This document shows, one piece after another, positions 2,305 through 20,127 of a stretch of 64,000 nt of DNA. The number at the start of each line of letters is the position of its first letter. Position 1 is the stretch's first letter. Location of the stretch: sequence record OP729297.1; one strand, given 5' to 3'. A model generated the notes under the pieces. The model worked only from the letters and a program-made list of their open reading frames with translations. It had not been told where the DNA came from and searched no databases. The position numbers and the translations under genes were made by a program.

Positions 2305-4644
2305 ATGGCCACTGAATCTATCTACGTTGACGCATTGCGTCTAACGCCTCAGGGAGAACAGGCCGTTGCGAACGCTAACGCTGGTGGACTTGCTATTCAA
2401 CCAGTGTCGTTTAAAGCAGGTGACTTTGTTGGCTCTAACCCTTCTGTGGTTCCAGAGCAGTTACTTGGCAGCGAGCTTGCGTCGGGCGCATTGTCGTATG
2501 TTCAGGTTCTTACCGAGAACAGTGCCCGCTTTATCTTTGATATTAAAGTCAACTACGTTGCAGGCGAATCGCTGAAACGAGTTGGTGAGCTGTTGATCAT
2601 GCTTTCTGACAACCGACCTTTTGGTCACGTTGTTCTGCAAGAGCCTATCATCGCCGTACCGAACTCTATCAATCGCGTTAGCCTTCTCGTACATATTCAG
2701 CAGGACATCCAAAAGATTCTTGCTGTGAAAATGGCTGACTACACATCTATACCGAGTGTAGCAACGCTCCAGAACTTACCGAGCTTGAGCGATAACGTGT
2801 TCAATGCCGTGTCGGTTCTTGATATGCACGTTAACTCTGACGGCACACGCTCTCCAGGTACTGCATATCGTTATGGACAAGGCTCATACTATTGGGCTTT
2901 CAGTGAGCATGACCGTGTGTTCAGCGGCCAGATTACTGCCGCAGGATTCATCAATGCAAACACGTTCAAGATTGCTTCGCTGTCCTCAGTGTTGAAGGCT
3001 AACGAGGTTGTTCTGATTCAGACAATCTCGGGTACGGGCGCTGGTGCGTGTCGTCACTTCAAATACACGAATGGTCAACTGGTCAACATGGACAGCGCGA
3101 TTCCATTCGTTAGCGCACAGACAACTATTGCCGTGTGGCGACGCATCACTAACCCAACAACTCCGTCTGCTGGCATTCCGTGGCCGCTGAATAACGATGT
3201 ACCAGAAGCGTGGGCATTGTACAGAGGCAAAGACTTGCAGCCGTATTGGGGACCTGTTGCTGGTGGTACTCGTCAAACAACTGGTACGCTGTTTGTTCCT
3301 CCAGGCAAACTGTTATTCAGTTCTGTTGTGACTACAGCAACGCCTGATAAGCTGCGCTACACGCTGTCTGAGATTCTCGATAGCTCAACCGACCTGTTGC
3401 TTGGTACGTCAGGTGTTCTCCAGCCGCGTACTGCCTACAGTGTTGTTGATGACCAGCTTCTGCTTTCGTCTTATCCTGAACAACGTATGCAACTCGATAT
3501 GCGTCAGTTCCGCGTTGAGCCTTCTCAAGGTCACGTTGTTCTGTTTGAGACATACGAAGGTGTTGGCGACGGACAGACTGCGCTGTTTAAACTCGGCAAC
3601 AAACCGATTGATAGCGTTGACATGGTGTTCTGTGTCGTCGGTTCAACGTGGCAGCCTACCACCGTGTATAAACTCACGAATGGTAACAGCGTAACGTTAA
3701 CCGAAGCAATCCCGTCAGGTCAGAAGTACACATTCTATGTAGCTCGCTATGAAGAACGCGCCAACTGGTCTACTCGTATTCGTGTTGCTCAGTATCGCCT
3801 GCCTTATGATGCTGATACATTTGTTCTGCCAACTACGCCACTGAACAAGTCGCATTGCGTTATGGCCATGAGCGGCCTGACAGTACACACGCAGGACTTC
3901 ACAGTAGCGGGCAATGTGCTGAAAACGTTGTCGCCTATTCCTGCCGACACACTCATTGAGATCACAATCTTTGAGAACGTTATGGCAGTAGGCTCGAAAG
4001 ACAGTTCGGTCGATGGCGTTATCATTGATGCTATCCCTACGCCGACTGGCTACATGTTCAAACGTCAAGGTCTGCCTCCTATCGACGTGCCTATCGCTGC
4101 ACCTGAAATCATTCAGGGTGAGGGCATTCAGATTACAGGCAAGTGGCCAGAGATTACAATTCGTAATACTCAGGCTCTCGCCGAAGAAGCTGACCCACGC
4201 AACATGTACAACATTCAGCAGAATGCGGACGATTCGGAAGAGCTGGTTATTCAGCAGCGCATCGAGTTCAAGAAAGGCATCATGCTTACGTGTGTCGCCG
4301 ACTTCCAGTGCCAACTAGGTCCTGGCTTTGCTGCCACCAGCGGTAAAGAGCATCTCGAATATGTTCTGTCGTTCAAGGTGCCTGGTACATCCGAAGCTGA
4401 ATATGGGCGTGGCCTTAAAGGCACAGGCAGTGCTGGCTTTAACGTTGTTACTTCTGATGCGAGTCTGACAGAAGTGATTGCGTATTCAAACGTTAGCCTG
4501 ACGCAGATGTTCACGGTGCTGATAGAAAACCAACCTCAAGGCTTCATTGATATCGTTGCTAAAGTGCGTATCGTTAACGCGCAGATTACAAGCTACGGTT
4601 CGAAGCTGTCAGGTAACTTGTGCATTAAGGTTGAACCGAAATGA
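2305..4644 (+). CDS. Tail fibre/baseplate-associated protein with tail-collar-like N-terminus and three ~60-70 aa beta repeats
   Basis: GGAG RBS then ATG at 2305. The N-terminus ([14 protein letters not shown]) resembles tail-fibre attachment domains, followed by repeats of the type [10 protein letters not shown]...QP..Y...N.VTL...P.G. Confidence 0.55.
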
Positions 4645-6080
4645 CAACACAGTTAAAACTTTCGCAAATCGAAACAACGGCTAACGATGAAGGTAAATCG
4701 CTGGTCGGTGTTGATGGTAGCGTCGAGTTTGAGTCTACGGACTTAGCGACGAATACTCAGATCGCAAGCGTAAGGTTTAACAGCAAGACAGGCGTGTTGG
4801 TGTTCATCAAGAAGAACGGGGAAGTAGTGAACGTCCCCGGACTTCCTACTATTGCTATGTTCGGTGAAGGGAAACCTGGGCGTCGAGGCGCTCCAGGTGC
4901 TCCTGGCCGTGACGGACGTGATGGTCGAGATGGTGAAACAGGCAGACAGGGCTGCGAAGGTGGTCCTGGCTCTAAAGGTAAGACTGGTCCTGTTGGTGAC
5001 CCAGGACGTGATGGTGAAGACGGTCCTCCTGGTGATACTGGGCGTCAAGGTCCAGACGGTCCTACGGGCCCAGACGGCCCTCCTGGTCCTACAGGTAACA
5101 TCGGTCCTCGTGGTGCTACTGGAGCAAGCTGTATCTCTGGTGCTACAGGCCCTACTGGCCCAGCGCCTATTACAACTGCTGTTCAGTCTAACACGCAGCC
5201 TACAGATGGTCGTGTGTTCGTTTGGTTGTACCCTACAGCCAACGTTACGCCAGCACCTCCTCTGCCTACTATAACGCCTCTTGCTGCGTCAGTGTCTAAC
5301 CTGTACATGGTAGGTCAACGTGCAGTGCAAGGCTCTGATGTATTTACTTCGCTTGCATACCTTCCTGTCAATGCGCGTGGTGGTGTAGGTCCATATAAGT
5401 ATCAATGGTCTATCACAACTACTGAGGGCGTAACGCTTGGCGCTACTGATACCTCAACGTGTATTGTTAACTTCTATCTGCGTCTCGGACTTGGTGCTGA
5501 TCGTACAATCAAAGGCACAATCCGTTGCGTAGTTACTGACCTGGGCCAAGCGTCACGTCCTACTGTTACTGTGAGTTCTGCGCTAACAGTTGTTGCACGT
5601 AACCCAACAAGCTCAACGTCTGGCTGTATTGTGTTTGGTTCTGTTGTCGAAACAATTACAGGACCTAAAGCTGTCGAGGACTTACGTGTAGGTGATAGCC
5701 TACTGAGTTTCTCTAATCAGCCTAAGAACTTCCGTCAGTGGTCTTCGCCTAGTCTCAAAGGCAATCTGGTGAATGCTACTGTTGTCGGTTTGAAGTACGG
5801 CGAAGAAGATCACTACTTCGTTATCAACGGACAGAAGTTCACACACGAACATCCAGTGCTTGTATATGACGATAGCGTGTGGCGTTATATTCCTGCGCGT
5901 GATGTGCAGCCAGGGAATACAGTGCTTGGTCGTAAGGGTCCTGTGTCAGTGTATGAGTTCCGCCGCGTAGATAATCAAGTGAAGACTGTTGATATCGACG
6001 TTGACCCATTTGATTGTTATTTCGTTGGTGATGTGCTCGCACACAACACGGATATTGTTGCGAAAGCGGAGAAAAAGTAA
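4641..6080 (+). CDS. Collagen-like fibre protein with an Ig/PKD-like domain and C-terminal Hint domain
   Basis: About 33 G-X-Y triplets, then a [10 protein letters not shown] Ig-like module, then CIVFGS...THEH...LAHN-T. Confidence 0.85.
5625..6047 (+). other. Hint (mini-intein / bacterial intein-like) domain, 141 aa
   Basis: Cys1 (TGT 5625), VEDLRVGD block, TxxH block B (THEH), terminal His-Asn (6042-6047), +1 Thr; no endonuclease insert. Confidence 0.85.
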
Positions 6081-6712
6081 TGAGTCTGATTAAAGTTAAG
6101 ACCGGTCTCATTCAGGCTGGTTCTTCGTCTACGCCTACTGCGATTCGTGCTCAGTCTGGGGTTCTCTCGATAGACCCTAGCGACGAACAGGTTCCCTCTG
6201 AGGTAACTTCCGATTCGTCGTTCGATGCAACTTCGGGTATTCTTACTCTCAAGTTTGCTAACGGGCAGACAGTTAAGGTAGGCGGCTTCCCTACTGCTGC
6301 TGATATACCTGAAGGTCGTCAGGGCGGTAGAGGTGAGACAGGTGCTGATGGTAAAGACGGACGAGATGGCCGCGATGGTAATCCAGGTGAGCCTGGGTGT
6401 ACTGGTCCTGTGGGTCCAGATGGTGAGCAGGGTATCCCAGGACCAGATGGCCGTGACGGATTACCAGGCCCTGTTGGTCCTACTGGCCCAGATGGTAGAA
6501 CAGGCCCTATGGGTCCTACTGGTCCTACTGGCCCTCGTGGCGGTACTGGTCCTACAGGCGCTACTGGTTCTACTGGACCGACTGGTCCTACCGGCCCTGC
6601 AGGTCCTGCTGGACGCCTGTCTATCATCGTCAGTGCTACTAACCCAGGGAACGTTGCTGCTGGCACAATCTGGGTGGACCCTACCAAAGATCAGAATATC
6701 ACATGGCCATAA
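6080..6712 (+). CDS. Collagen-like fibre protein 2
   Basis: [15 protein letters not shown]-domain, long G-X-Y tract, C-terminal SATNP..GTIWVDP motif. Confidence 0.85.
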
Positions 6713-6721
6713 GGAGGCAAC

Positions 6722-7213
6722 GTGGTAGAAAAAGTTGATATATCGCTCGTTAAGGCCAATGCTTCTGGTCCTGTCGTAGCGACCGAAGGGGGAATCACAG
6801 TTGATACTGTTCAGGATGATAGCCAACTCAGCGGCTCATTCGATGCAGTTACAGGTCTACTGGCGATTAACATCCCTAATATCGGCAAGCTCCAGATTTC
6901 TGGTCTGCCTACAATACACAGCATCGGCTACGGTCCTGCTGGTGGCGTTGGTCCTGCTGGCCGTGATGGTATTGATGGTCTCATGGGTAGCGATGGTCGT
7001 CGCGGTACTGATGGCTGTCCTGGTCCTCGTGGTTCTGATGGGCAGCAAGGTAAGCAAGGCTACGTAGGTAATCGCGGGCCTGCTGGTCCTACGGGCCCTA
7101 CTGGACCTACTGGCGCGCCAGGTAATCCTGGTACGGTGATGGTCTTCGTACAAGATACAGATCCAGCCATTGATAATGAGATCGCACCAGGCGCCATCTG
7201 GGTACGGCCGTAA
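6722..7213 (+). CDS. Collagen-like fibre protein 3
   Basis: AAGGAGG RBS and GTG start; FDAVTGLL..GLPT domain, G-X-Y tract, ends PGAIWVRP. Confidence 0.85.
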   Translation: MVEKVDISLVKANASGPVVATEGGITVDTVQDDSQLSGSFDAVTGLLAINIPNIGKLQISGLPTIHSIGYGPAGGVGPAGRDGIDGLMGSDGRRGTDGCPGPRGSDGQQGKQGYVGNRGPAGPTGPTGPTGAPGNPGTVMVFVQDTDPAIDNEIAPGAIWVRP

Positions 7214-7222
7214 GGAGAGAGC

Positions 7223-9247
7223 ATGTCACGTTTTCGCGTTCGTAATGCTGCGAATAACGGTTGGCTTGACTGCGTGGACACGCCCATGTTCATACGCACA
7301 CATGCAGGAGACTGGACGCCATTAAGCCCAGACAAATTCAGTGTGCGTAATCAGTGGGGAAAGAGTTGGTTACCAATCAACGACTCTTTCGACCCTACGT
7401 ATGATGACCCGTGTTCAAACCTTGAGACGGGCGCATGTGGTGGCGGTCCAACGTCAACTACCAAAGGTTCTGGTAACGGGATAGGGAGTGGTGGCCGTGA
7501 GAAATACGATATCCTCAAAGGCTATCCTGCAGGGTTTGATTTACCTGATGCTGGTCGCACTGGCTTCGGTCTTATTAACTCTTTCTCTCCTCCTACTGGT
7601 CGATCTATCAATAGACCCGGCATCAAGACCATCGAATCATACGACCCTACTGGTGTTGCTTCTCGCGCAGGGCTAGGCACTTATGCTAACCCTAACGTAC
7701 CTTACGCTTCTGTTCATGGGCGTGGTGCTGTTATCACCGAGACGTATTATGCAATGCCAGCAATCGAAGGTTACGTGGAGCTGATGATCGCGTCCTATGC
7801 ACCAGCTGGTGCTAGTGTTGACGTGTACCACATGGGTGTGCGTGTTGCATCGACGTGTGGTAAGCTGGCCGGTCGCTCGCGCATCAAATTCCAATTCGAC
7901 CCTGACGCTGCTGATATGCGTATCATGGTGCGTGTGCGTACAACGCAGGGTTATGGCTGGAGCTTAGAAGTATATCCTCCGCGCCTTGCCGCACCTTCTG
8001 ACCGTGGCGGATTAGCTCTCGATAGTCAGGCATCGTATGACGTTATCAATTTCCCTGACGTCATTCATCCAGACTACATCGGCAGCCCAATCTTCCCTGC
8101 ACCATGTCATGCAACTGTTTGGCCTATTGCTGAACGTATTCAGAATGCTAACGCTTTCGAATACTATCACTTCATCGGCTGGACAGCAGGCTGGATGTAT
8201 CTCGACTACACCTCGTGGGAAACATTCGACTTCATTGAGGTCTATCAGTCTGGTCGCCGTATCGCTACGACGCTTGACGCTCGTACTGGTGAGGGTTATC
8301 TGTATTTCTACTTTGACCCTCAAGGTGTTGCATGTGATATCATGGTGCGCGTAGTCAGTAAGGACTTTGGTAACGCTGCCTCGCTTGCGAGTTGCTTCTA
8401 CAGTCTGTACTGTCCTGGTGAACGTGGTGCGCGTGAATACATGCACCCTTGCCAGAGCTACAGCGTGTACTCTGCCGGTCATCCAACCACAGAAGATAAT
8501 TTTGCGTTAGGAACTCAATCGGACATTCGTGCAGAGCTTGTTGTTTGTGTTGCGAACTCGTTCGATACCAAGTTCGAAGTGTTTGACCAAGACATGAACG
8601 TGCTCGATACCTCTATCGTTGCTGCGGGCAAGACTGGTACACTCGAATTTTGGAAGTACCCTGAGCATGTGCTGCGCTCTAACATCACTGTACGAGCGAC
8701 AGCGCCTATCGGATGTGATTGGTCATACTTCGTGTACTGTCCGATTCAGCCTCCTAAGATTAACGTGAGTGACTTCACCGTTCCTTATCGTTGCGTAACA
8801 ATCGAAGGTGGTAACGATCAGCCGCCAGATTCAGACGTTCTGCCGTGGCAGCCAAACGCATGGGAACAAACAGGTGGACGCGGTACAGGTTCTCCTAATG
8901 CTTCTCAAGTGTGGACACGCGACGGTAACTACATGAACATCTGGGGCGGTGTGAATGGTTGGTTCAAGTGGGGTAACTTCTTCACTAAGCCAATTAAGCA
9001 AATCACTTTCGCATGGGTGTACGACGGTAAGAATGGTGGCTGGCACACAATTGAGATCTACGAGCGCACTGCTGGTGAAGGCGCTGCTAAGAATCCTGCA
9101 AACAACAGCGGAACGTATCAGTATTTCACGTTCGATGTGAACATACCTGTTGGCCAAGAAATTTGGTTGCGTGTTCAAGGTGGCGGTGACCGTGGTGACT
9201 CGAACGACCTCGATTATCTCGCTATCACCAACGTAGTATTTGGATAA
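7223..9247 (+). CDS. Cys-rich virion fibre-associated protein with three internal beta-sandwich repeats
   Basis: Three N-terminal (F/M)x(V/I)R(N/T)..W repeats and three ~110-aa repeats with the pattern ..VY..G.R(V/I)A(S/T)T....F.FDP....IMVRV. Confidence 0.55.
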   Translation: MSRFRVRNAANNGWLDCVDTPMFIRTHAGDWTPLSPDKFSVRNQWGKSWLPINDSFDPTYDDPCSNLETGACGGGPTSTTKGSGNGIGSGGREKYDILKGYPAGFDLPDAGRTGFGLINSFSPPTGRSINRPGIKTIESYDPTGVASRAGLGTYANPNVPYASVHGRGAVITETYYAMPAIEGYVELMIASYAPAGASVDVYHMGVRVASTCGKLAGRSRIKFQFDPDAADMRIMVRVRTTQGYGWSLEVYPPRLAAPSDRGGLALDSQASYDVINFPDVIHPDYIGSPIFPAPCHATVWPIAERIQNANAFEYYHFIGWTAGWMYLDYTSWETFDFIEVYQSGRRIATTLDARTGEGYLYFYFDPQGVACDIMVRVVSKDFGNAASLASCFYSLYCPGERGAREYMHPCQSYSVYSAGHPTTEDNFALGTQSDIRAELVVCVANSFDTKFEVFDQDMNVLDTSIVAAGKTGTLEFWKYPEHVLRSNITVRATAPIGCDWSYFVYCPIQPPKINVSDFTVPYRCVTIEGGNDQPPDSDVLPWQPNAWEQTGGRGTGSPNASQVWTRDGNYMNIWGGVNGWFKWGNFFTKPIKQITFAWVYDGKNGGWHTIEIYERTAGEGAAKNPANNSGTYQYFTFDVNIPVGQEIWLRVQGGGDRGDSNDLDYLAITNVVFG

Positions 9248-9250
9248 CAT

Positions 9251-9266
9251 AGGGGCTTCGGCCCCT
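9251..9266 (+). terminator. C(UUCG)G hairpin, weak U-tract (terminator or RNA-stabilising stem)
   Basis: AGGGGC-TTCG-GCCCCT immediately after the stop at 9247. Confidence 0.55.
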
Positions 9267-9288
9267 CTTCTCGATCTAAGGACATAAC

Positions 9289-12168
9289 ATGCTGCAACAA
9301 AGCTGCTTGTATGCGCGAGGCATTACGCCTGTATTTAGCGGTAGTCCTGGCGATGGCTCTATTACCGCAGTAGACGCTATGGCAGTTGATAGCTCACGCT
9401 TCACCTCTTTTGTTGTTGATGGTCATGCTCTTTCATACGTATGCGGCTTCGGCTCTGTTTACATGAATGGTCGATTCATCCGCGACGGTAGTCCTCTTGT
9501 TGATGCTAACTACGGTTGGCTCGGTAACTACCGCAATAAGAGCATTAACAACATGGGTGTGCTGCGTCACCTGTTGACACAACGCGGCTACAACTCGAAC
9601 ATCACATATGGCAGCACCATGCTTGTCATATCAGACCTTGCACCTGTCAATGATGACACTGCAATGGAGTCGTGGGGACAACTCGTTGCGTATATGCAGC
9701 GCATCCCTCTCGACATGCTTGCTCATAGCTGGCAAGAGATTAACGCTGGTGCGTATGGTTATGACGGTACGTACAAGTATTTCAAGCAGTTCAGTTGCGT
9801 GATGCTTCTGCTGTCTGCGCCCAACCAGAGTATGCCTGCCCAAATGCTTAGTGCTCTGAGTGAGGCCCATCGAAACGGCGTCAGCCTGATTGTGTTGCAG
9901 AAAGGTCCGTATGAAGGCAACGTAAACTTCAACGCGATCTTTAATCCACTCGGCATTCGCAGTAACGGTCAGGCGTATGTTGCTTCTACCGTTGCAGCAA
10001 AGAACAAGAGCATTAACGCATTCGGCAATCATGTATCTTGGACCAACGTCGCTCAGTTGCATAACCAAATCAACTTCGAGCTATCTGCTGCGTATCAGTT
10101 CACAGGAGCTACGCAGGCAGGACCAGGCACTATTGGTGGTCAGCCAGGTACATGGCGCCAGTTCTACTGCGGACAAGTTGATATCTCTGACGATGTTGTC
10201 ATTGACCCACCTCTTATCTATCGTGACAAGTGCTGCGTCGAACCAGGCTCTGCGTATCAGGTAGACTTCGATGTTACTACATATCCGCAGAAGCCCGATG
10301 ATTGGGCAGCGCGTATGGCAGCAGGTGATGTTACAGTCTCTTGGTCAAACGAAAACGCGCAGTCACTTGCAGCACGTAGCCTAATCTTCTCTCACGTCGT
10401 AGGCTACCAGCGTTATCTCGACACAGGCGATACAGGCTACACAATCTTTAACGGTACTCGCTACACCGACACTCGTGGCTGGAACGTCTATAAGATTCGT
10501 AAGTCAGACCGCGCGTTGGTTGAGCGTCGTACATTTGACATTCACGCATCTGCCGAAGGTACTAACCCAGGTGTTGCGAACGCTGCTGCCTGTGCGGCTT
10601 TCTTGAACTCAATTGGCTCTGACCATTACGTCTACGTTGTGTCTTACGATACGGCCGACGTTAACCGTTTGCAGGGTGGGCTACCTCAAGCCATGTACCG
10701 CATTGGTGCATCGCGTCGTGTGTACGCAGGTTCGCAGTATGTGTATCGCGCTGCATACTCTCTGTTTGGTGAGCCTGGTATTGGTGAAGGTAACGCGTGG
10801 AATGAAATGTATCGTGGCGCCAAGTCGTCTGATACTGACAGCTACTTCTCTGTCGGCTATGACTTCGACACGAATGGTTTCCCTTACGTTACAGGTACAG
10901 ACCGCGAAGGCAACATGAGCATGGCGCTCAACGGTTTGTTTGAGAACACCAAGAGTAGTCACCTGCGCTACTACAAAGTGCTTGGCTCTCAGGACGGTGC
11001 CTCGACAATGGGGATGCAGCACAACGTTACGATTAGGGATAACCGTTTCAAGAAGCTGCCTATGTATGAGTCAAAGACCTTCGTTGTGTCTGTGACTAAC
11101 CCATGCTTCCCTGTGCCTAAGATTCAGTCTCACGATTGGGTTCACGTTGTTAGCCGCGCCAACAACCGCTACGTTAAATATCCGTTCAAGGACCTATGTG
11201 AGTATCTGATTACAACGTCGGACGGTAGCGGCCAGAACGAAATGTGTACCTCTCACCTGATGATGAACTGGGATATGTTTGGCTCAATCGGGTCAGGCAC
11301 TATCTACAACTCTGCTGGTGCATCGCATAAGATTTACTGCGGTACTGAGAACGGGAACATTAATGACCCGAACTCGTTGTATATCCAAACAACGGAAGAA
11401 GGGAAAGTGTGGCACATCTATGAGCGTAAGTATCAGCTCATTACAGAAGAAGCCTCACGCGATTCGAACGACTGGCAGGTTGTCTGGAAATGGAATGGCG
11501 TCGGTACTCAAGGCCACAACATCCAGATTGAGGCCGGCTATGAGTACATCGTGTTTGCGTATGACCGCTACGGCGAGATTGAACTTGCAGAGCGTCACTT
11601 CTTCGTACCACCAGCAGAGTATTTGCCTAAGTGGGGATCGAACTACTACTGCCGTGACTTCTCGAACTCAACCACGTTCACAGTAGACCGTTCGCTGCGC
11701 TGCAATGCGTACTGCGAGAAGTCTAGCAACAATGGCGGTGAGAACGGGATTATGATGATCATTCGTCGTCCTCTGTTCTTAACTACTGGCGCTGCTGACC
11801 GTACTGGTTGGGAATGTATCTTCAACAACAACGGCACATCGGTTCCTCGCGGGAATAACTACAACATCCCGTGTGTGAAAGATTACCAGTACATGGTGCT
11901 GTGCTCTGTCGGTGATGGTGCTTATTCTTCTCACCACTTCAATGCGTGGAAAGGCGCTTTCGATATGGTGTGGGAAGGATTGTTTGAGGCTGACTCTGGT
12001 GGCCGTGCTTCCTGGACAGAAGGACTTGTGACGTTGATGCAAAGCGGAAACTCAGGAGGACGCACAATGGATTGCTTCATTGACGACGGACGCGCTAACC
12101 CTATCGGTGTGTTCCAAGTATGGCGCCGTCCTATTCTGTGCTGGGAGCCTGACGAGATTGATGGTTAA
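9289..12168 (+). CDS. Large multidomain fibre/receptor-binding protein containing an ILEI/PANDER-like (GG-type lectin) domain
   Basis: RGWNVYKI...RTFDI...AAFLNSI...YVVSYD...MYRIGAS...YRAAYSLFGEPG (about 10471-10820) matches the ILEI pattern; there are two further C-terminal repeats. Confidence 0.6.
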   Translation: MLQQSCLYARGITPVFSGSPGDGSITAVDAMAVDSSRFTSFVVDGHALSYVCGFGSVYMNGRFIRDGSPLVDANYGWLGNYRNKSINNMGVLRHLLTQRGYNSNITYGSTMLVISDLAPVNDDTAMESWGQLVAYMQRIPLDMLAHSWQEINAGAYGYDGTYKYFKQFSCVMLLLSAPNQSMPAQMLSALSEAHRNGVSLIVLQKGPYEGNVNFNAIFNPLGIRSNGQAYVASTVAAKNKSINAFGNHVSWTNVAQLHNQINFELSAAYQFTGATQAGPGTIGGQPGTWRQFYCGQVDISDDVVIDPPLIYRDKCCVEPGSAYQVDFDVTTYPQKPDDWAARMAAGDVTVSWSNENAQSLAARSLIFSHVVGYQRYLDTGDTGYTIFNGTRYTDTRGWNVYKIRKSDRALVERRTFDIHASAEGTNPGVANAAACAAFLNSIGSDHYVYVVSYDTADVNRLQGGLPQAMYRIGASRRVYAGSQYVYRAAYSLFGEPGIGEGNAWNEMYRGAKSSDTDSYFSVGYDFDTNGFPYVTGTDREGNMSMALNGLFENTKSSHLRYYKVLGSQDGASTMGMQHNVTIRDNRFKKLPMYESKTFVVSVTNPCFPVPKIQSHDWVHVVSRANNRYVKYPFKDLCEYLITTSDGSGQNEMCTSHLMMNWDMFGSIGSGTIYNSAGASHKIYCGTENGNINDPNSLYIQTTEEGKVWHIYERKYQLITEEASRDSNDWQVVWKWNGVGTQGHNIQIEAGYEYIVFAYDRYGEIELAERHFFVPPAEYLPKWGSNYYCRDFSNSTTFTVDRSLRCNAYCEKSSNNGGENGIMMIIRRPLFLTTGAADRTGWECIFNNNGTSVPRGNNYNIPCVKDYQYMVLCSVGDGAYSSHHFNAWKGAFDMVWEGLFEADSGGRASWTEGLVTLMQSGNSGGRTMDCFIDDGRANPIGVFQVWRRPILCWEPDEIDG

Positions 12169-12177
12169 GGAGAGCGT

Positions 12178-12381
12178 ATGCCAGCTTATGCACGTTTAGC
12201 ATTCAAAGACCCAAGCAGAGACAGATGGGTAGCTAATTTAGCGTATGGTGGAACGAAGGTTCGGTATCAGGATTCAGATGGAAGTGTGCGTTGGGTTCGC
12301 ATGACAATCAACAACACCAAAGTTAAAAATCCTGAGGCTGGACAATCGGGTCAACCAGATTGGACAACACTGACTGGTTAG
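12178..12381 (+). CDS. Small fibre adaptor-like protein (67 aa, three Trp-ending repeats)
   Basis: AAGGAG RBS; repeats resemble the N-terminus of the 7223 protein. Confidence 0.55.
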   Translation: MPAYARLAFKDPSRDRWVANLAYGGTKVRYQDSDGSVRWVRMTINNTKVKNPEAGQSGQPDWTTLTG

Positions 12382-12392
12382 GAGTTTAGCCC

Positions 12393-13214
12393 ATGTCTCT
12401 TACGAAGATTAACCCTGCACTTATCGACGGCGGTGCTTCGCCTGTTGGTAAAGTGTTGGGTAAGAAGACGGCGACCGCTGTTGCGTTTATCGACCCAACA
12501 GAGGCTGCAAAGATTCCCGGCTCTCAGGGTGTTGAGTTTGACACAACTACAGGTACGCTAACAGTCATCTGGCCTGATGGTAGTCAGTCTAGTGTTATCG
12601 GACTGCCTACTGCTGATCAGCTTAAATCAGGGCGCGAAGGTAAACAGGGTAAAGACGGCTTACGCGGTCTCCCTGGTGCTGATGGTCGTGATGGTCGTGA
12701 TGGTGAAGATGGTTGCCCGGGACCTCGTGGCCCTCGTGGCCGTAACGGACCTACTGGTAACACAGGACCTGTCGGCGCTACTGGTAACACTGGCGCTGTG
12801 GGTCCTACTGGTGCAACTGGTCCTACAGGTAGCCCGGGACGCGATGCTGCTATTGACGAGTATCGTGTGTCTCAGGCGCTCAACCCAAACACCGGCGCTG
12901 TAATACCGAACGCATGGATTGGTAGTAACCGTGACATGAACACAGGCTTTACTCAGAACATGGGTCGAGTCGTGAACGCGTCAACTACTGATACCATCCA
13001 CGTTGTGTTTAACACGGCATTCATCAACCGTTGTATCAGCATTAACATCACGTTCGTTAACGCTGCTCTGAACCAAGCAAGGACCTACCAGCTCTACAAT
13101 CTGGACGGTACGAGCGCGATGAATGAGAACGCCCTGTTAGGCGGCTTCACCATCAAGTCTACTGGCACCAACACTGCTGGCTGGGACTTCTGGTATACTG
13201 CGGTAGGTGATTAA
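12393..13214 (+). CDS. Collagen-like fibre protein 4 with a C-terminal tail-fibre tip-like domain
   Basis: FDTTTGTL..GLPT domain, G-X-Y tract, C-terminal HVVFNTAF...GGFTI...FWYTAVGD typical of fibre tip domains. Confidence 0.8.
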   Translation: MSLTKINPALIDGGASPVGKVLGKKTATAVAFIDPTEAAKIPGSQGVEFDTTTGTLTVIWPDGSQSSVIGLPTADQLKSGREGKQGKDGLRGLPGADGRDGRDGEDGCPGPRGPRGRNGPTGNTGPVGATGNTGAVGPTGATGPTGSPGRDAAIDEYRVSQALNPNTGAVIPNAWIGSNRDMNTGFTQNMGRVVNASTTDTIHVVFNTAFINRCISINITFVNAALNQARTYQLYNLDGTSAMNENALLGGFTIKSTGTNTAGWDFWYTAVGD

Positions 13215-19312: not shown

Positions 19313-19534
19313 ATGATCAACTATTCGATGGGGCGCACCTTTGAACAGGAGACGCCCGCGACCGAATGGACGATCGCACATAACTTCGGCCGCTACGTCG
19401 CAGTGACAACTTGCGTGAATATGCCTGATGGTAAGCTCCATCAAGTGCTACCACTCGATGTTATCGTTGTGGATATGAATACGGTCAAAGTAACATTCCC
19501 GTATGCAGTTACGGGGCATGTGCGGATCGCCTAA
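19313..19534 (+). CDS. Stand-alone W.I.HN module protein
   Basis: EQETPATEWTIAHNFGRY...VTFPYAVTGHVRI; GGGAG RBS. Confidence 0.6.
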   Translation: MINYSMGRTFEQETPATEWTIAHNFGRYVAVTTCVNMPDGKLHQVLPLDVIVVDMNTVKVTFPYAVTGHVRIA

Positions 19535-19545
19535 GGAGATAAACA

Positions 19546-20127
19546 ATGTATACTTTTGGTTTGCAACTCGCAGGCGAACAAGCTCAGATTACACGCGCAC
19601 CAGGTGACCCTAATTCGTCTGGACCTACCTTTCCTTCAAACCCAACAAACGGTCGTGTATGGAACCTGACTGCTGTTGTTGGCGCTAACCAGCCTGGCCT
19701 GTACGTCTACTCGACTGTCCGCGCTAAGTGGGTTAACCAGTTGCAGTCTGTAAATCCATATGACGTAGGCCTGAGCATTCTCAAGCGCTACGCTGGTGGC
19801 CAAGAGATTGCGCGTTACCTGTCAGTGCGTACCACCGCAATCATCAAAAACTTCGCTGGCTCTATGGCGAATGCTGATGTTGCTGCTACCGCCCAAGCGG
19901 TGTTCAAAGTAAGCGCATACGACACAGTTACTCAGGCTGTTATTCAGCTTGGTACTATCACGTTCGGTGCTGGTTCTAAGACTGGCGTATTCGCACCGTT
20001 ATCTGCATATCTCGACACTGAGATCATTCTGGTTGCTGGTGACCAGCTTCGCGTTGTCGCACCAGACACTGCTGATACGACACTGAACGGCGTGGCAATC
20101 ACCATCGCAGGCCGTCTGCTAGTGTAA
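19546..20127 (+). CDS. Virion structural protein (fibre knob motif plus beta-sandwich)
   Basis: FPSNPTNGRVW...LYVY...W motif; C-terminal LVAGDQLRVVAP. Confidence 0.55.
   Translation: MYTFGLQLAGEQAQITRAPGDPNSSGPTFPSNPTNGRVWNLTAVVGANQPGLYVYSTVRAKWVNQLQSVNPYDVGLSILKRYAGGQEIARYLSVRTTAIIKNFAGSMANADVAATAQAVFKVSAYDTVTQAVIQLGTITFGAGSKTGVFAPLSAYLDTEIILVAGDQLRVVAPDTADTTLNGVAITIAGRLLV

What the first reader, a model, noticed from the sequence alone, without database searches (positions are those of the whole stretch)
6640..12381. A fibre knob motif appears split between genes: three collagen C-termini and single-chain triple-repeat caps
Seen: the collagen tracts end in S/Q.T.P....(G).(I/V)W motifs ([13 protein letters not shown]; [13 protein letters not shown]-; QDTDP..PGAIWVRP-stop). 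The intact version of this knob in 19546 continues with a beta-strand and a second Trp (FPSNPTNGRVW...LYVY..VRAKW). That missing half occurs three times in tandem at the N-terminus of 7223 (RFRVRNAANNGW, MFIRTHAGDW, FSVRNQWGKSW) and three times in the 67-aa 12178 protein (LAFKDPSRDRW, VRYQDSDGSVRW, VKNPE..QPDW). Inference: one pseudo-trimeric chain completes the knob of three collagen chains, giving a 3:1 adaptor that mounts a monomeric head on a trimeric stalk.
Basis: inference. Interest (0 to 1): 0.68.

Follow-up and report, generated by a model that had tools for sequence, protein, structure and literature searches.

The report
Three-hairpin caps for headless collagen fibres
A giant "hairy" Erwinia phage makes two collagen-like fibre stalks that stop right after the collagen, and two related three-hairpin, three-tryptophan modules that may each sit as one chain on a three-chain stalk end; computed support for this is real but weak, and nothing has been shown at the bench.

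Summary
The window is Erwinia jumbo myophage vB_Ea_2910A (Alexandravirus). colB (6080-6712) and colC (6722-7213) end 24-30 residues after the collagen in a strand-loop-strand "clasp" (..P..G.hWh..). p674 residues 1-52 and the whole 67-aa protein each form three Trp-bearing beta-hairpins.

With diverse alignments the two hairpin modules are homologous (hhalign E 1.8e-7). Every lineage examined, including Pseudomonas phage PaBG, has two headless collagens and two such modules.

- **Complex prediction:** three colC tails plus p674(1-66) scored 0.55 against a best control of 0.00. The tool calls this weak support. 58 of 80 solved complexes and 2 of 110 mismatched pairs reached the mark; at 0.60 or under, only 7 solved complexes and both mismatches did.
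- **Folding alone:** neither module folds confidently alone.
- **Co-variation:** p67 distances follow the colB tail (partial Mantel r 0.65); p674N shows no such signal with the colC tail.

All four collagen paralogs carry the same clasp, two continue without any completing hairpin, and protein 19546 shows no significant similarity. A three-chain-to-one-chain cap is plausible (about 0.45). It would be a new variant of the T-even gp38-type monomer-on-trimer adhesin.

The parts
4641..6080 (+). colA, 479 aa: N-terminal docking domain, collagen (33 triplets with one break), post-collagen clasp (5169-5225), Ig/SprB-like region, C-terminal Hint domain
   Evidence: Pfam Collagen E 1.1e-13 and PT-HINT E 2.8e-6; triplet count
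6080..6712 (+). colB, 210 aa: headless collagen stalk with N-domain, 34 GXY triplets, Cys in triplet 10 and a 30-residue tail
   Evidence: Pfam Collagen E 5.9e-15; invariant 102-residue collagen span in 23 lineages
6617..6709 (+). colB tail: clasp [20 protein letters not shown] plus an extension ending in an aromatic residue (..ITWP)
   Evidence: Conserved to PaBG, where it reads ..IIVSTTDPGAVGAGWLWV..TPWP; distances co-vary with p67, partial Mantel r 0.65, p 0.0005
6722..7213 (+). colC, 163 aa (GTG start): headless collagen stalk with N-domain, 23 GXY triplets, Cys in triplet 10 and a 24-residue tail
   Evidence: Pfam Collagen E 4.3e-14; alignment A2
7136..7210 (+). colC tail: clasp VMVFVQ-DTDPAIDNEIAPG-AIWVRP, then the stop
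   Evidence: Q144, D147, P148, G157 and W160 invariant in 18 sequences; used as three copies in the complex prediction
7223..7381 (+). Three-hairpin Trp module at the N-terminus of p674 (residues 1-53; W14, W31, W49)
   Evidence: DSSP hairpins; invariant Trp residues; homologous to p67, E 1.8e-7; complex score 0.55 against 0.00
7391..7582 (+). p674 residues 57-120: Gly/Ser-rich segment with C64 and C72, nearly invariant but predicted disordered
   Evidence: Invariant columns; pLDDT 22-34
7223..9247 (+). p674, 674 aa: non-collagen fibre protein with a beta-sandwich array and a hypervariable last ~146 residues (8807-9244)
   Evidence: phrog_26008; residues 1-~525 conserved to 36-44% identity while the C-terminus is exchanged; Foldseek hits to tandem CUB/discoidin/reelin-type sandwiches
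9289..12168 (+). p959: second large non-collagen fibre protein (ILEI-like region); no three-hairpin module
   Evidence: Pfam ILEI E 2.3e-5, below the cut-off; N-termini compared
12178..12381 (+). p67: free-standing three-hairpin Trp module (W17, W39, W62)
   Evidence: phrog_29040; 91-100% identical across Alexandravirus; DSSP hairpins, pLDDT 55 alone; distant 56-83 aa relatives
12393..13214 (+). colD, 273 aa: collagen stalk (24 triplets) with clasp (12858-12923) and its own gp53-like C-terminal domain; always the gene directly after p67
   Evidence: Pfam Collagen E 5.6e-15 and Gp53-like_C E 0.016; synteny
7211..7225 (+). TAA stop of colC embedded in a GGAG Shine-Dalgarno site 9 nt before the p674 ATG; the same layout occurs at 6710-6724, 12166-12180 and 12379-12395
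   Evidence: Read directly from the sequence
19546..20127 (+).
   Evidence: Motif conserved in orthologues; hhalign E 0.54 and 0.2; not hit by the hairpin profile

Best explanation
This is the fibre module of a 'hairy' jumbo myophage, encoded directly downstream of the baseplate genes.

Four paralogous proteins build collagen-like triple-helical stalks. They share an N-terminal docking domain, one Cys in triplet 10, and a short strand-loop-strand clasp right after the collagen. Two of them, colB and colC, end there and have no head.

The head for colC is the next gene, p674, a non-collagen and probably single-chain array of beta-sandwich domains with an exchangeable C-terminal receptor-binding tip. 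Its first ~52 residues are three beta-hairpins, each presenting one conserved Trp. This pseudo-threefold module docks on, and folds together with, the three clasps at the end of a colC trimer, joining one chain to three.

p67 is the same module as a free 67-residue protein. It most likely does the same on the colB tail, either as a plain cap or as a landing pad for p959.

**Shown:** the motifs, their conservation, the homology of the two modules, and the two-and-two co-occurrence.

**Computed but weak:** the colC tail-p674N contact and the p67-colB tail co-variation.

**Inferred:** the 3:1 ratio, the Trp-in-pocket geometry, the partner of p67, and that the proteins are in the virion.
For: - **Complex prediction:** colC(119-163) x3 plus p674(1-66) gave ipSAE 0.49/0.55/0.61 (median 0.55), best of three controls 0.00. 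The mark was reached by 58 of 80 solved complexes and 2 of 110 mismatched pairs, but at 0.60 or under by only 7 solved complexes and both mismatches. Runs agree in at least 82% of contacts. Partner pLDDT is at least 69 in the complex, against 32 with colC replaced. Tail pLDDT is 78-84, against 58-61 with an unrelated partner.
- **Folding alone:** p67 alone has pLDDT 55.5 and p674 residues 1-52 have pLDDT 40-52. Both still show three hairpins.
- **Homology:** p67 family against p674 N-terminus, hhalign probability 93.8%, E 1.8e-7.
- **Co-occurrence:** two headless collagens and two modules in every lineage read, although the number and size of the large proteins vary.
- **Co-variation:** partial Mantel, p67 against the colB tail, r 0.65, p 0.0005, the best of nine segments.
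- **p674 architecture:** conserved N-terminal ~525 residues and a swapped C-terminus; tandem beta-sandwich body.
- **Gene layout:** stop codons embedded in the next gene's ribosome-binding site.
- **Precedent:** S16 gp38 sits as a monomer on trimeric gp37 through three conserved Trp residues (PMC6851490).
Against: - The tool itself rates a pass at this score as more often wrong than right unless the pairing was already likely. It gave no contacts, and the job (three copies, my own shallow alignments) differs from its calibration.
- p674N shows no co-variation with the colC tail: partial r -0.006.
- colA and colD have the same clasp and need no cap, so the clasp may be self-sufficient.
- The most constant neighbour of p67 is the downstream collagen gene colD, not colB.
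- PaBG has only one large protein yet still has a p67-like gene, so p67 is not simply an adaptor for p959.
- An earlier scan note proposes that two collagen chains form a mixed helix. In contig L031, colA and colB both gain a Cys in triplet 20. If they do mix, colB would not be a headless homotrimer.
- No virion proteomics or structure for these proteins was found in the paper library.
Confidence: 0.45

Rival explanations
1. The clasp is a self-sufficient trimerisation and registration knot. colB and colC are bare whiskers, perhaps the 'hairs' of this phage group. p674 and p959 attach elsewhere, for example to the baseplate or through the invariant 57-120 segment. On this reading the three-hairpin module is a small independent domain with another partner, such as a glycan or a proline-rich strand.
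For: - All four paralogs carry the clasp, and colA and colD continue without a cap.
- There is no p674N-colC tail co-variation.
- Relatives have the hairy morphology (PMC6143709).
- The best, non-significant, PDB profile hits are generic Trp hairpins: WW domain, designed trefoil and designed propeller.
- The p67 profile also picks up FG-GAP-like propeller hairpins.
Against: - The complex test passed with 0.00 controls, and both sides gained confidence together.
- Neither module folds alone.
- The count is two headless stalks and two modules in every lineage read.
- p67 co-varies with the colB tail.
Confidence: 0.3
2. p67, and perhaps the p674 N-terminus, is an assembly factor. A pseudo-threefold template transiently aligns three collagen chains to nucleate the triple helix, and p67 is not kept in the virion.
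For: - p67 is small, very conserved, and always directly upstream of a collagen gene with coupled translation signals.
- Phage fibre chaperones are typically small genes next to fibre genes (general knowledge).
- p67 also co-varies with the colD N-domain, partial r 0.39.
Against: - The homologous module is covalently part of p674, a large structural-type protein.
- There is no match to known chaperone families in Pfam or PHROGs.
- Nothing here tests whether p67 is present in the virion.
Confidence: 0.15
3. Single heads arise from mixed collagen helices rather than from caps. colB fills in beside colA, and colC beside colD, so that one headed chain pairs with two headless ones.
For: - Collagen spans match pairwise and never vary: 33/34 triplets for colA/colB and 23/24 for colC/colD.
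- colA and colB overlap (ATGA) and both gain a Cys in triplet 20 in L031.
- Earlier scan note s1-159942.
Against: - colC and colD are separated by three genes.
- This model leaves the two three-hairpin modules and the attachment of p674 unexplained.
- A colC homotrimer tail model passed the complex test.
- Length invariance gives no co-variation to test.
Confidence: 0.1

Closest known systems
T-even gp38-type adhesin on the gp37 trimer (Salmonella phage S16, PDB 6F45; Dunne et al. 2018, as described in PMC6851490)
   Same: One monomeric receptor-binding protein is mounted on the end of a homotrimeric fibre and is encoded next to it. Its N-terminal attachment domain has three elements, each presenting one conserved Trp, 120 degrees apart, into three equivalent pockets. 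Here there are three hairpins with three near-invariant Trp residues.
   Different: The gp38 domain is a three-helix bundle docking on a beta-helix. Here the module is three beta-hairpins docking on the end of a collagen helix. There is no sequence similarity. The module also exists as a free 67-aa protein.
PAAR-repeat cap on the VgrG/gp5 spike (general knowledge; a PAAR gene lies upstream in the AD1 relative)
   Same: A single chain with three internal repeats and pseudo-threefold symmetry caps the blunt end of a trimer. It often carries a large extension domain.
   Different: There is no PAAR Pfam match and no Cys/His metal site in p67. The partner would be a collagen tail, not a beta-helix. 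The extension here is C-terminal and attached through a long Gly-rich linker.
T4 fibritin foldon (sequence confirmed in 41 papers)
   Same: It is a Trp-centred beta-hairpin (..AYVRKDGEWVLL..) used to register a three-chain fibre, and by eye it resembles hVR..(turn)..Wh.h in each unit. Foldon is commonly fused to collagen peptides to trimerise them (general knowledge).
   Different: Foldon has one hairpin per chain, acting within the same chain as the fibre. Here three hairpins sit in one separate chain. Profile searches of the PDB did not retrieve fibritin, so the likeness is visual only.
Monomer-in-trimer junctions of other fibres (T4 gp35 hinge, T5 pb5 tip; general knowledge)
   Same: They show a symmetry mismatch between a trimeric fibre and one copy of a distal protein.
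   Different: No similarity in sequence or predicted fold was found. One relative annotates p959, not p674, as 'T4 gp35 like', and I did not confirm that.

Membership tests
Collagen triple helix repeat proteins (PF01391) | Long uninterrupted Gly-X-Y tract above the Pfam cut-off | tested here: met
   colA, colB, colC and colD score 51-55 bits against a cut-off of 27.2. They have 33, 34, 23 and 24 triplets.
gp38-type monomeric adhesin cap (S16 gp37-gp38) | Three conserved Trp residues on three repeated elements of an N-terminal attachment domain | tested here: met
   W14, W31 and W49 in p674 and W17, W39 and W62 in p67 are invariant or nearly so. Their geometry is not known.
gp38-type monomeric adhesin cap (S16 gp37-gp38) | The attachment domain is a three-helix bundle | tested here: not met
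   DSSP on both models gives beta-hairpins only.
gp38-type monomeric adhesin cap (S16 gp37-gp38) | Sequence relationship to gp38, or a glycine-rich PGII sandwich | tested here: not met
   No Pfam, PHROG or PDB sequence match.
gp38-type monomeric adhesin cap (S16 gp37-gp38) | One cap per fibre trimer, bound at the distal end | tested here: inconclusive
   The 3:1 model passes the complex test weakly: 0.55 against a best control of 0.00. No other ratio was folded.
PAAR-repeat spike caps (PF05488) | PAAR repeats detectable by profile; a metal-binding site | tested here: not met
   No Pfam hit at E <= 0.1 for p67 or p674. p67 has no Cys or His.
T4 fibritin foldon | A C-terminal hairpin on each fibre chain that trimerises within the fibre chain itself | tested here: not met
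   The three hairpins lie in one separate chain. PDB profile searches did not return fibritin.
Phage tail-fibre assembly chaperones | Match to a known chaperone family; absence from the virion | tested here: inconclusive
   No family match. Virion content is not testable with these tools, and no proteomics were found.
phrog_29040 / phrog_26008 (function unknown) | Full-length profile match | tested here: met
   p67 matches at E 1.3e-44 and p674 at E 0 over its full length. Neither PHROG has an assigned function.

The most novel reading that the evidence does not exclude
The three hairpins of one chain and the three clasps of a collagen trimer may fold only together, into one composite beta-domain spread over four chains. 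That would be a natural single-chain registrar and cap for collagen triple helices. It would also be a new way to mount exchangeable single-chain receptor-binding heads (p674), or a bare cap (p67), on collagen stalks, conserved across hairy jumbo phages of Erwinia, Dickeya, Yersinia and Pseudomonas.
Probability: 0.3. Interest if true: 0.75.

Novelty: new variant of a known kind. Interest (0 to 1): 0.55.

Why it matters
Collagen-like fibres are common in phages, yet how they carry receptor-binding parts is largely unknown, and no structure of such a junction turned up in my searches. If a 50-70 residue three-hairpin module caps a collagen trimer, three things follow.
- It would explain how these jumbo phages exchange host-recognition heads on constant stalks.
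- It would add a beta-hairpin solution to the trimer-to-monomer mismatch, so far known from T-even gp38 and PAAR.
- It would offer a small natural tag for putting one cargo on a collagen-like trimer.

If it is false, the region is an ordinary, well-conserved fibre gene cluster.

Tried and rejected
- **Stop-codon readthrough fusing colC to p674.** The two genes are in frame here, 9 nt apart. The stop is TAA inside a ribosome-binding site. Frame identity is not conserved: Y3, Yen9-02 and L031 are out of frame, and Yoloswag has an HNH gene between the two. Rejected.
- **colA/colB/colC mixed trimer capped by one module.** Rejected on the fixed, unequal collagen lengths.
- **19546 as the intact version of the knob.** Not supported by hhalign or by the hairpin profile.
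- **First profile comparison of p67 and p674N.** With shallow alignments it was negative (E 0.26), and cross-searches with hairpin-unit profiles were negative. Only alignments that include PaBG, NCTB and metagenomic relatives gave E 1.8e-7.
- **Structure and atlas searches.** PDB sequence and profile searches and the ESM Atlas gave nothing significant.
- **Search for a fusion.** An exhaustive profile search of 1.84 billion proteins with p67 found only small free-standing relatives and unrelated FG-GAP-like repeats. No protein fusing the module to a collagen was found.
- **Wider tail search.** A search with the colC tail found only close relatives.
- **Other limits.** The window's own assembly is not held. 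The paper library has no proteomics or structure for this module.
- **Not done.** No read-mapping tools and no alternative genetic code were used.

Full report
**Source and context.** The 8.6 kb around the finding is 100% identical to Erwinia phage vB_Ea_2910A (OP729297, 262.9 kb) and 92% identical to Dickeya phage AD1, genus Alexandravirus. These are 'hairy' jumbo myophages (PMC6143709). In AD1 the cluster lies directly downstream of PAAR, baseplate and baseplate-wedge genes.

The gene order is colA (4641-6080), colB (6080-6712), colC (6722-7213), p674 (7223-9247), p959 (9289-12168), p67 (12178-12381), colD (12393-13214) and p161. The same order holds in:
- Y3, pEa_SNUABM_5, Yoloswag, Yersinia fHe-Yen9-02 and Dickeya JA29;
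- metagenomic contigs at 35-45% identity;
- with variations, Pseudomonas phage PaBG and phage NCTB.

All quoted strings are present and conserved.
- colB always ends ..h-I-I-V-S-x-x-[NQD]-P-..-G-x-h-W-V-.., plus a short extension ending in an aromatic residue.
- colC always ends ..h-Q-x-x-D-P-..-G-[AS]-h-W-h-[RKV]-x and then the stop.
- The first ~52 residues of p674, and all of p67, are predicted as three consecutive beta-hairpins with a conserved Trp at the start of each second strand.
- The tail motif occurs in only three of 532 six-frame ORFs of the window. Three hairpin-pattern hits in a row occur only in p674, and are reached by 0 of 20,000 shuffles; the pattern was chosen after the fact.

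**The two modules are homologous.**
- With narrow alignments the comparison failed.
- With alignments that include PaBG, NCTB and metagenomic relatives, hhalign gives probability 93.8% and E 1.8e-7 over 47 columns, with hairpins 1 and 2 and the first strand of hairpin 3 aligned in register.
- A control against colC gives E 0.44.
- The module has no relative among solved structures. The best, non-significant, hits are designed symmetric trefoils and propellers and a WW domain.

**The 'split knob' argument does not hold.**
- The strand-loop-strand clasp follows the collagen in all four paralogs. colA continues through a Pro-rich linker into an Ig-like region and a Hint domain. colD continues into a gp53-like domain. 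The clasp is therefore a complete shared element, not half of a domain.
- Protein 19546, the proposed intact version, has a conserved P..P..G.hW plus LYVY..W motif. It shows no significant similarity to the module (E 0.54) or to the colC tail (E 0.2), and the hairpin profile does not hit it.
- A colA/colB/colC mixed trimer is unlikely, because the collagen spans are a fixed 33, 34 and 23 triplets in all 23 lineages.

**Evidence that one chain docks on three.**
- *Complex prediction.* The one available job used colC residues 119-163 in three copies and p674 residues 1-66.
  - The score was ipSAE 0.49/0.55/0.61 (median 0.55), and all three controls scored 0.00.
  - 58 of 80 solved complexes and 2 of 110 mismatched pairs reached the mark. 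At 0.60 or under, only 7 of the solved complexes and both mismatches did, so the verdict is weak support.
  - The runs share at least 82% of contacts. Partner pLDDT is at least 69.
  - With colC replaced, the partner falls to pLDDT 32. With an unrelated partner, the tails fall from 78-84 to 58-61.
  - The job differs from the tool's calibration (three copies, my own shallow alignments), and no contacts were released.
- *Folding alone.* p67 reaches pLDDT 55.5. p674 residues 1-52 reach 40-52. Residues 57-120 are nearly invariant in sequence but predicted disordered, which suggests a segment that orders on a partner.
- *Co-occurrence.* Every lineage read has exactly two headless collagens and two modules, although the large proteins vary: PaBG has one, and L041 has p674 split in two.
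- *Co-variation.* A partial Mantel test over 22 lineages, controlling for the p674 body, links p67 to the colB tail (r 0.65, p 0.0005), the best of nine segments. A conserved control segment gives r -0.05. p674N shows no link to the colC tail (r -0.006). Such tests are inflated by shared ancestry and count as modest evidence.

**What p674 looks like.** Residues 1-~525 are conserved to 36-44% identity in distant relatives, while the C-terminal part is exchanged or much longer. The body matches tandem CUB/discoidin/reelin-type beta-sandwiches, an architecture typical of single chains, and the last ~135 residues fold confidently. This fits a single-chain adhesin with a swappable tip and a constant attachment end.

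**Gene layout.** Each stop codon (TAA, or TAG for p67) lies inside the GGAG ribosome-binding site of the next gene, which fits coupled expression.

**Alternatives.**
- The clasp may be a self-sufficient knot and colB and colC bare whiskers.
- p67 may be an assembly template rather than a virion part. It always sits directly upstream of a collagen gene.
- Single heads may come from mixed helices. An earlier scan note proposes one mixed helix, and in L031 both colA and colB gain a Cys in triplet 20.
- Readthrough fusion of colC to p674 is rejected.

**Comparison with known systems.** The closest precedent is the gp38 adhesin of phage S16. It is a monomer on trimeric gp37, held by three conserved Trp residues on three helices that enter three equivalent pockets (PMC6851490). 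PAAR on VgrG is a second single-chain pseudo-threefold cap (general knowledge). The present module shares the logic but not the fold, the sequence or the partner. Each hairpin resembles the fibritin foldon hairpin by eye (sequence checked), but no search links them.

**Verdict.** The three-to-one cap is plausible but only weakly supported, at about 0.45. The split-domain rationale is not supported. If true, this is a new variant of a known kind of junction, on a collagen stalk.

Noticed in passing
window 5625-6080; L027/L034 colA orthologues; L031:6695-9988; L043:12368-16282: colA ends in a Hint domain (Pfam PT-HINT E 2.8e-6). In the JA29-like and L034 lineages colA stops about where the Hint domain begins (about 315-327 aa), which fits self-removal. 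In other lineages the p959-like (L031) and p674-like (NCTB) proteins also end in Hint-like ..HN tails.
   Followed up: partly
window 4641-13214 and orthologues in L009-L042: Collagen spans never change across lineages down to about 35% identity: colA 33, colB 34, colC 23 and colD 24 triplets, with a Cys at position X of triplet 10. In L031 both colA and colB have an extra Cys in triplet 20, and colB also has it in L037. This hints that colA and colB share one helix.
   Followed up: partly
window 7391-7582 (p674 residues 57-120): This Gly/Ser-rich stretch with two Cys residues is almost invariant in 18 sequences, yet it is predicted as disordered coil (pLDDT 22-34). It probably orders on a partner or forms a disulfide or metal knot.
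   Followed up: no
L005:3188-4045 (Yoloswag); L041:1934-5241: Mobile or foreign insertions lie exactly between colC and p674. Yoloswag has an HNH endonuclease gene there. L041 has a 105-aa ORF there, and its p674 orthologue is split into 513-aa and 484-aa genes.
   Followed up: no
L003 (PV550095, Alcaligenes phage Afa-NA1, 78 kb) and L008 (PV359490, Salmonella phage Sen-NF, 108 kb): These two records, with different stated hosts, encode identical colB, colC, p674 N-terminus and p67 proteins. In Sen-NF the genes abut with no intergenic bases. In Afa-NA1 p959 is missing and p674 is truncated. The records look fragmentary or mis-assigned.
   Followed up: no
L043:12155-12367 and 19342-19470 (phage NCTB): The deposited annotation misses the three-hairpin N-terminus of the p674-like gene and most of the p67-like gene, of which only its last 38 codons are called.
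   Followed up: partly
P0006, P0008, P0011, P0013: The p67 profile weakly matches tandem FG-GAP/VCBS-like repeats (..DLAVFRPSTDQWIIRLSNGG..) of bacterial proteins. Hairpin 1 of p67 (LAFKDPSRDRWVANLAYGG) looks like a propeller-blade hairpin, and the likeness is probably convergent.
   Followed up: no
window 12178-12381 compared with its neighbours: p67 is 91-100% identical across Alexandravirus genomes, whereas neighbouring p959 falls to 61% and colC to 77%. That is unusually strong constraint for a 67-residue protein of unknown function.
   Followed up: partly
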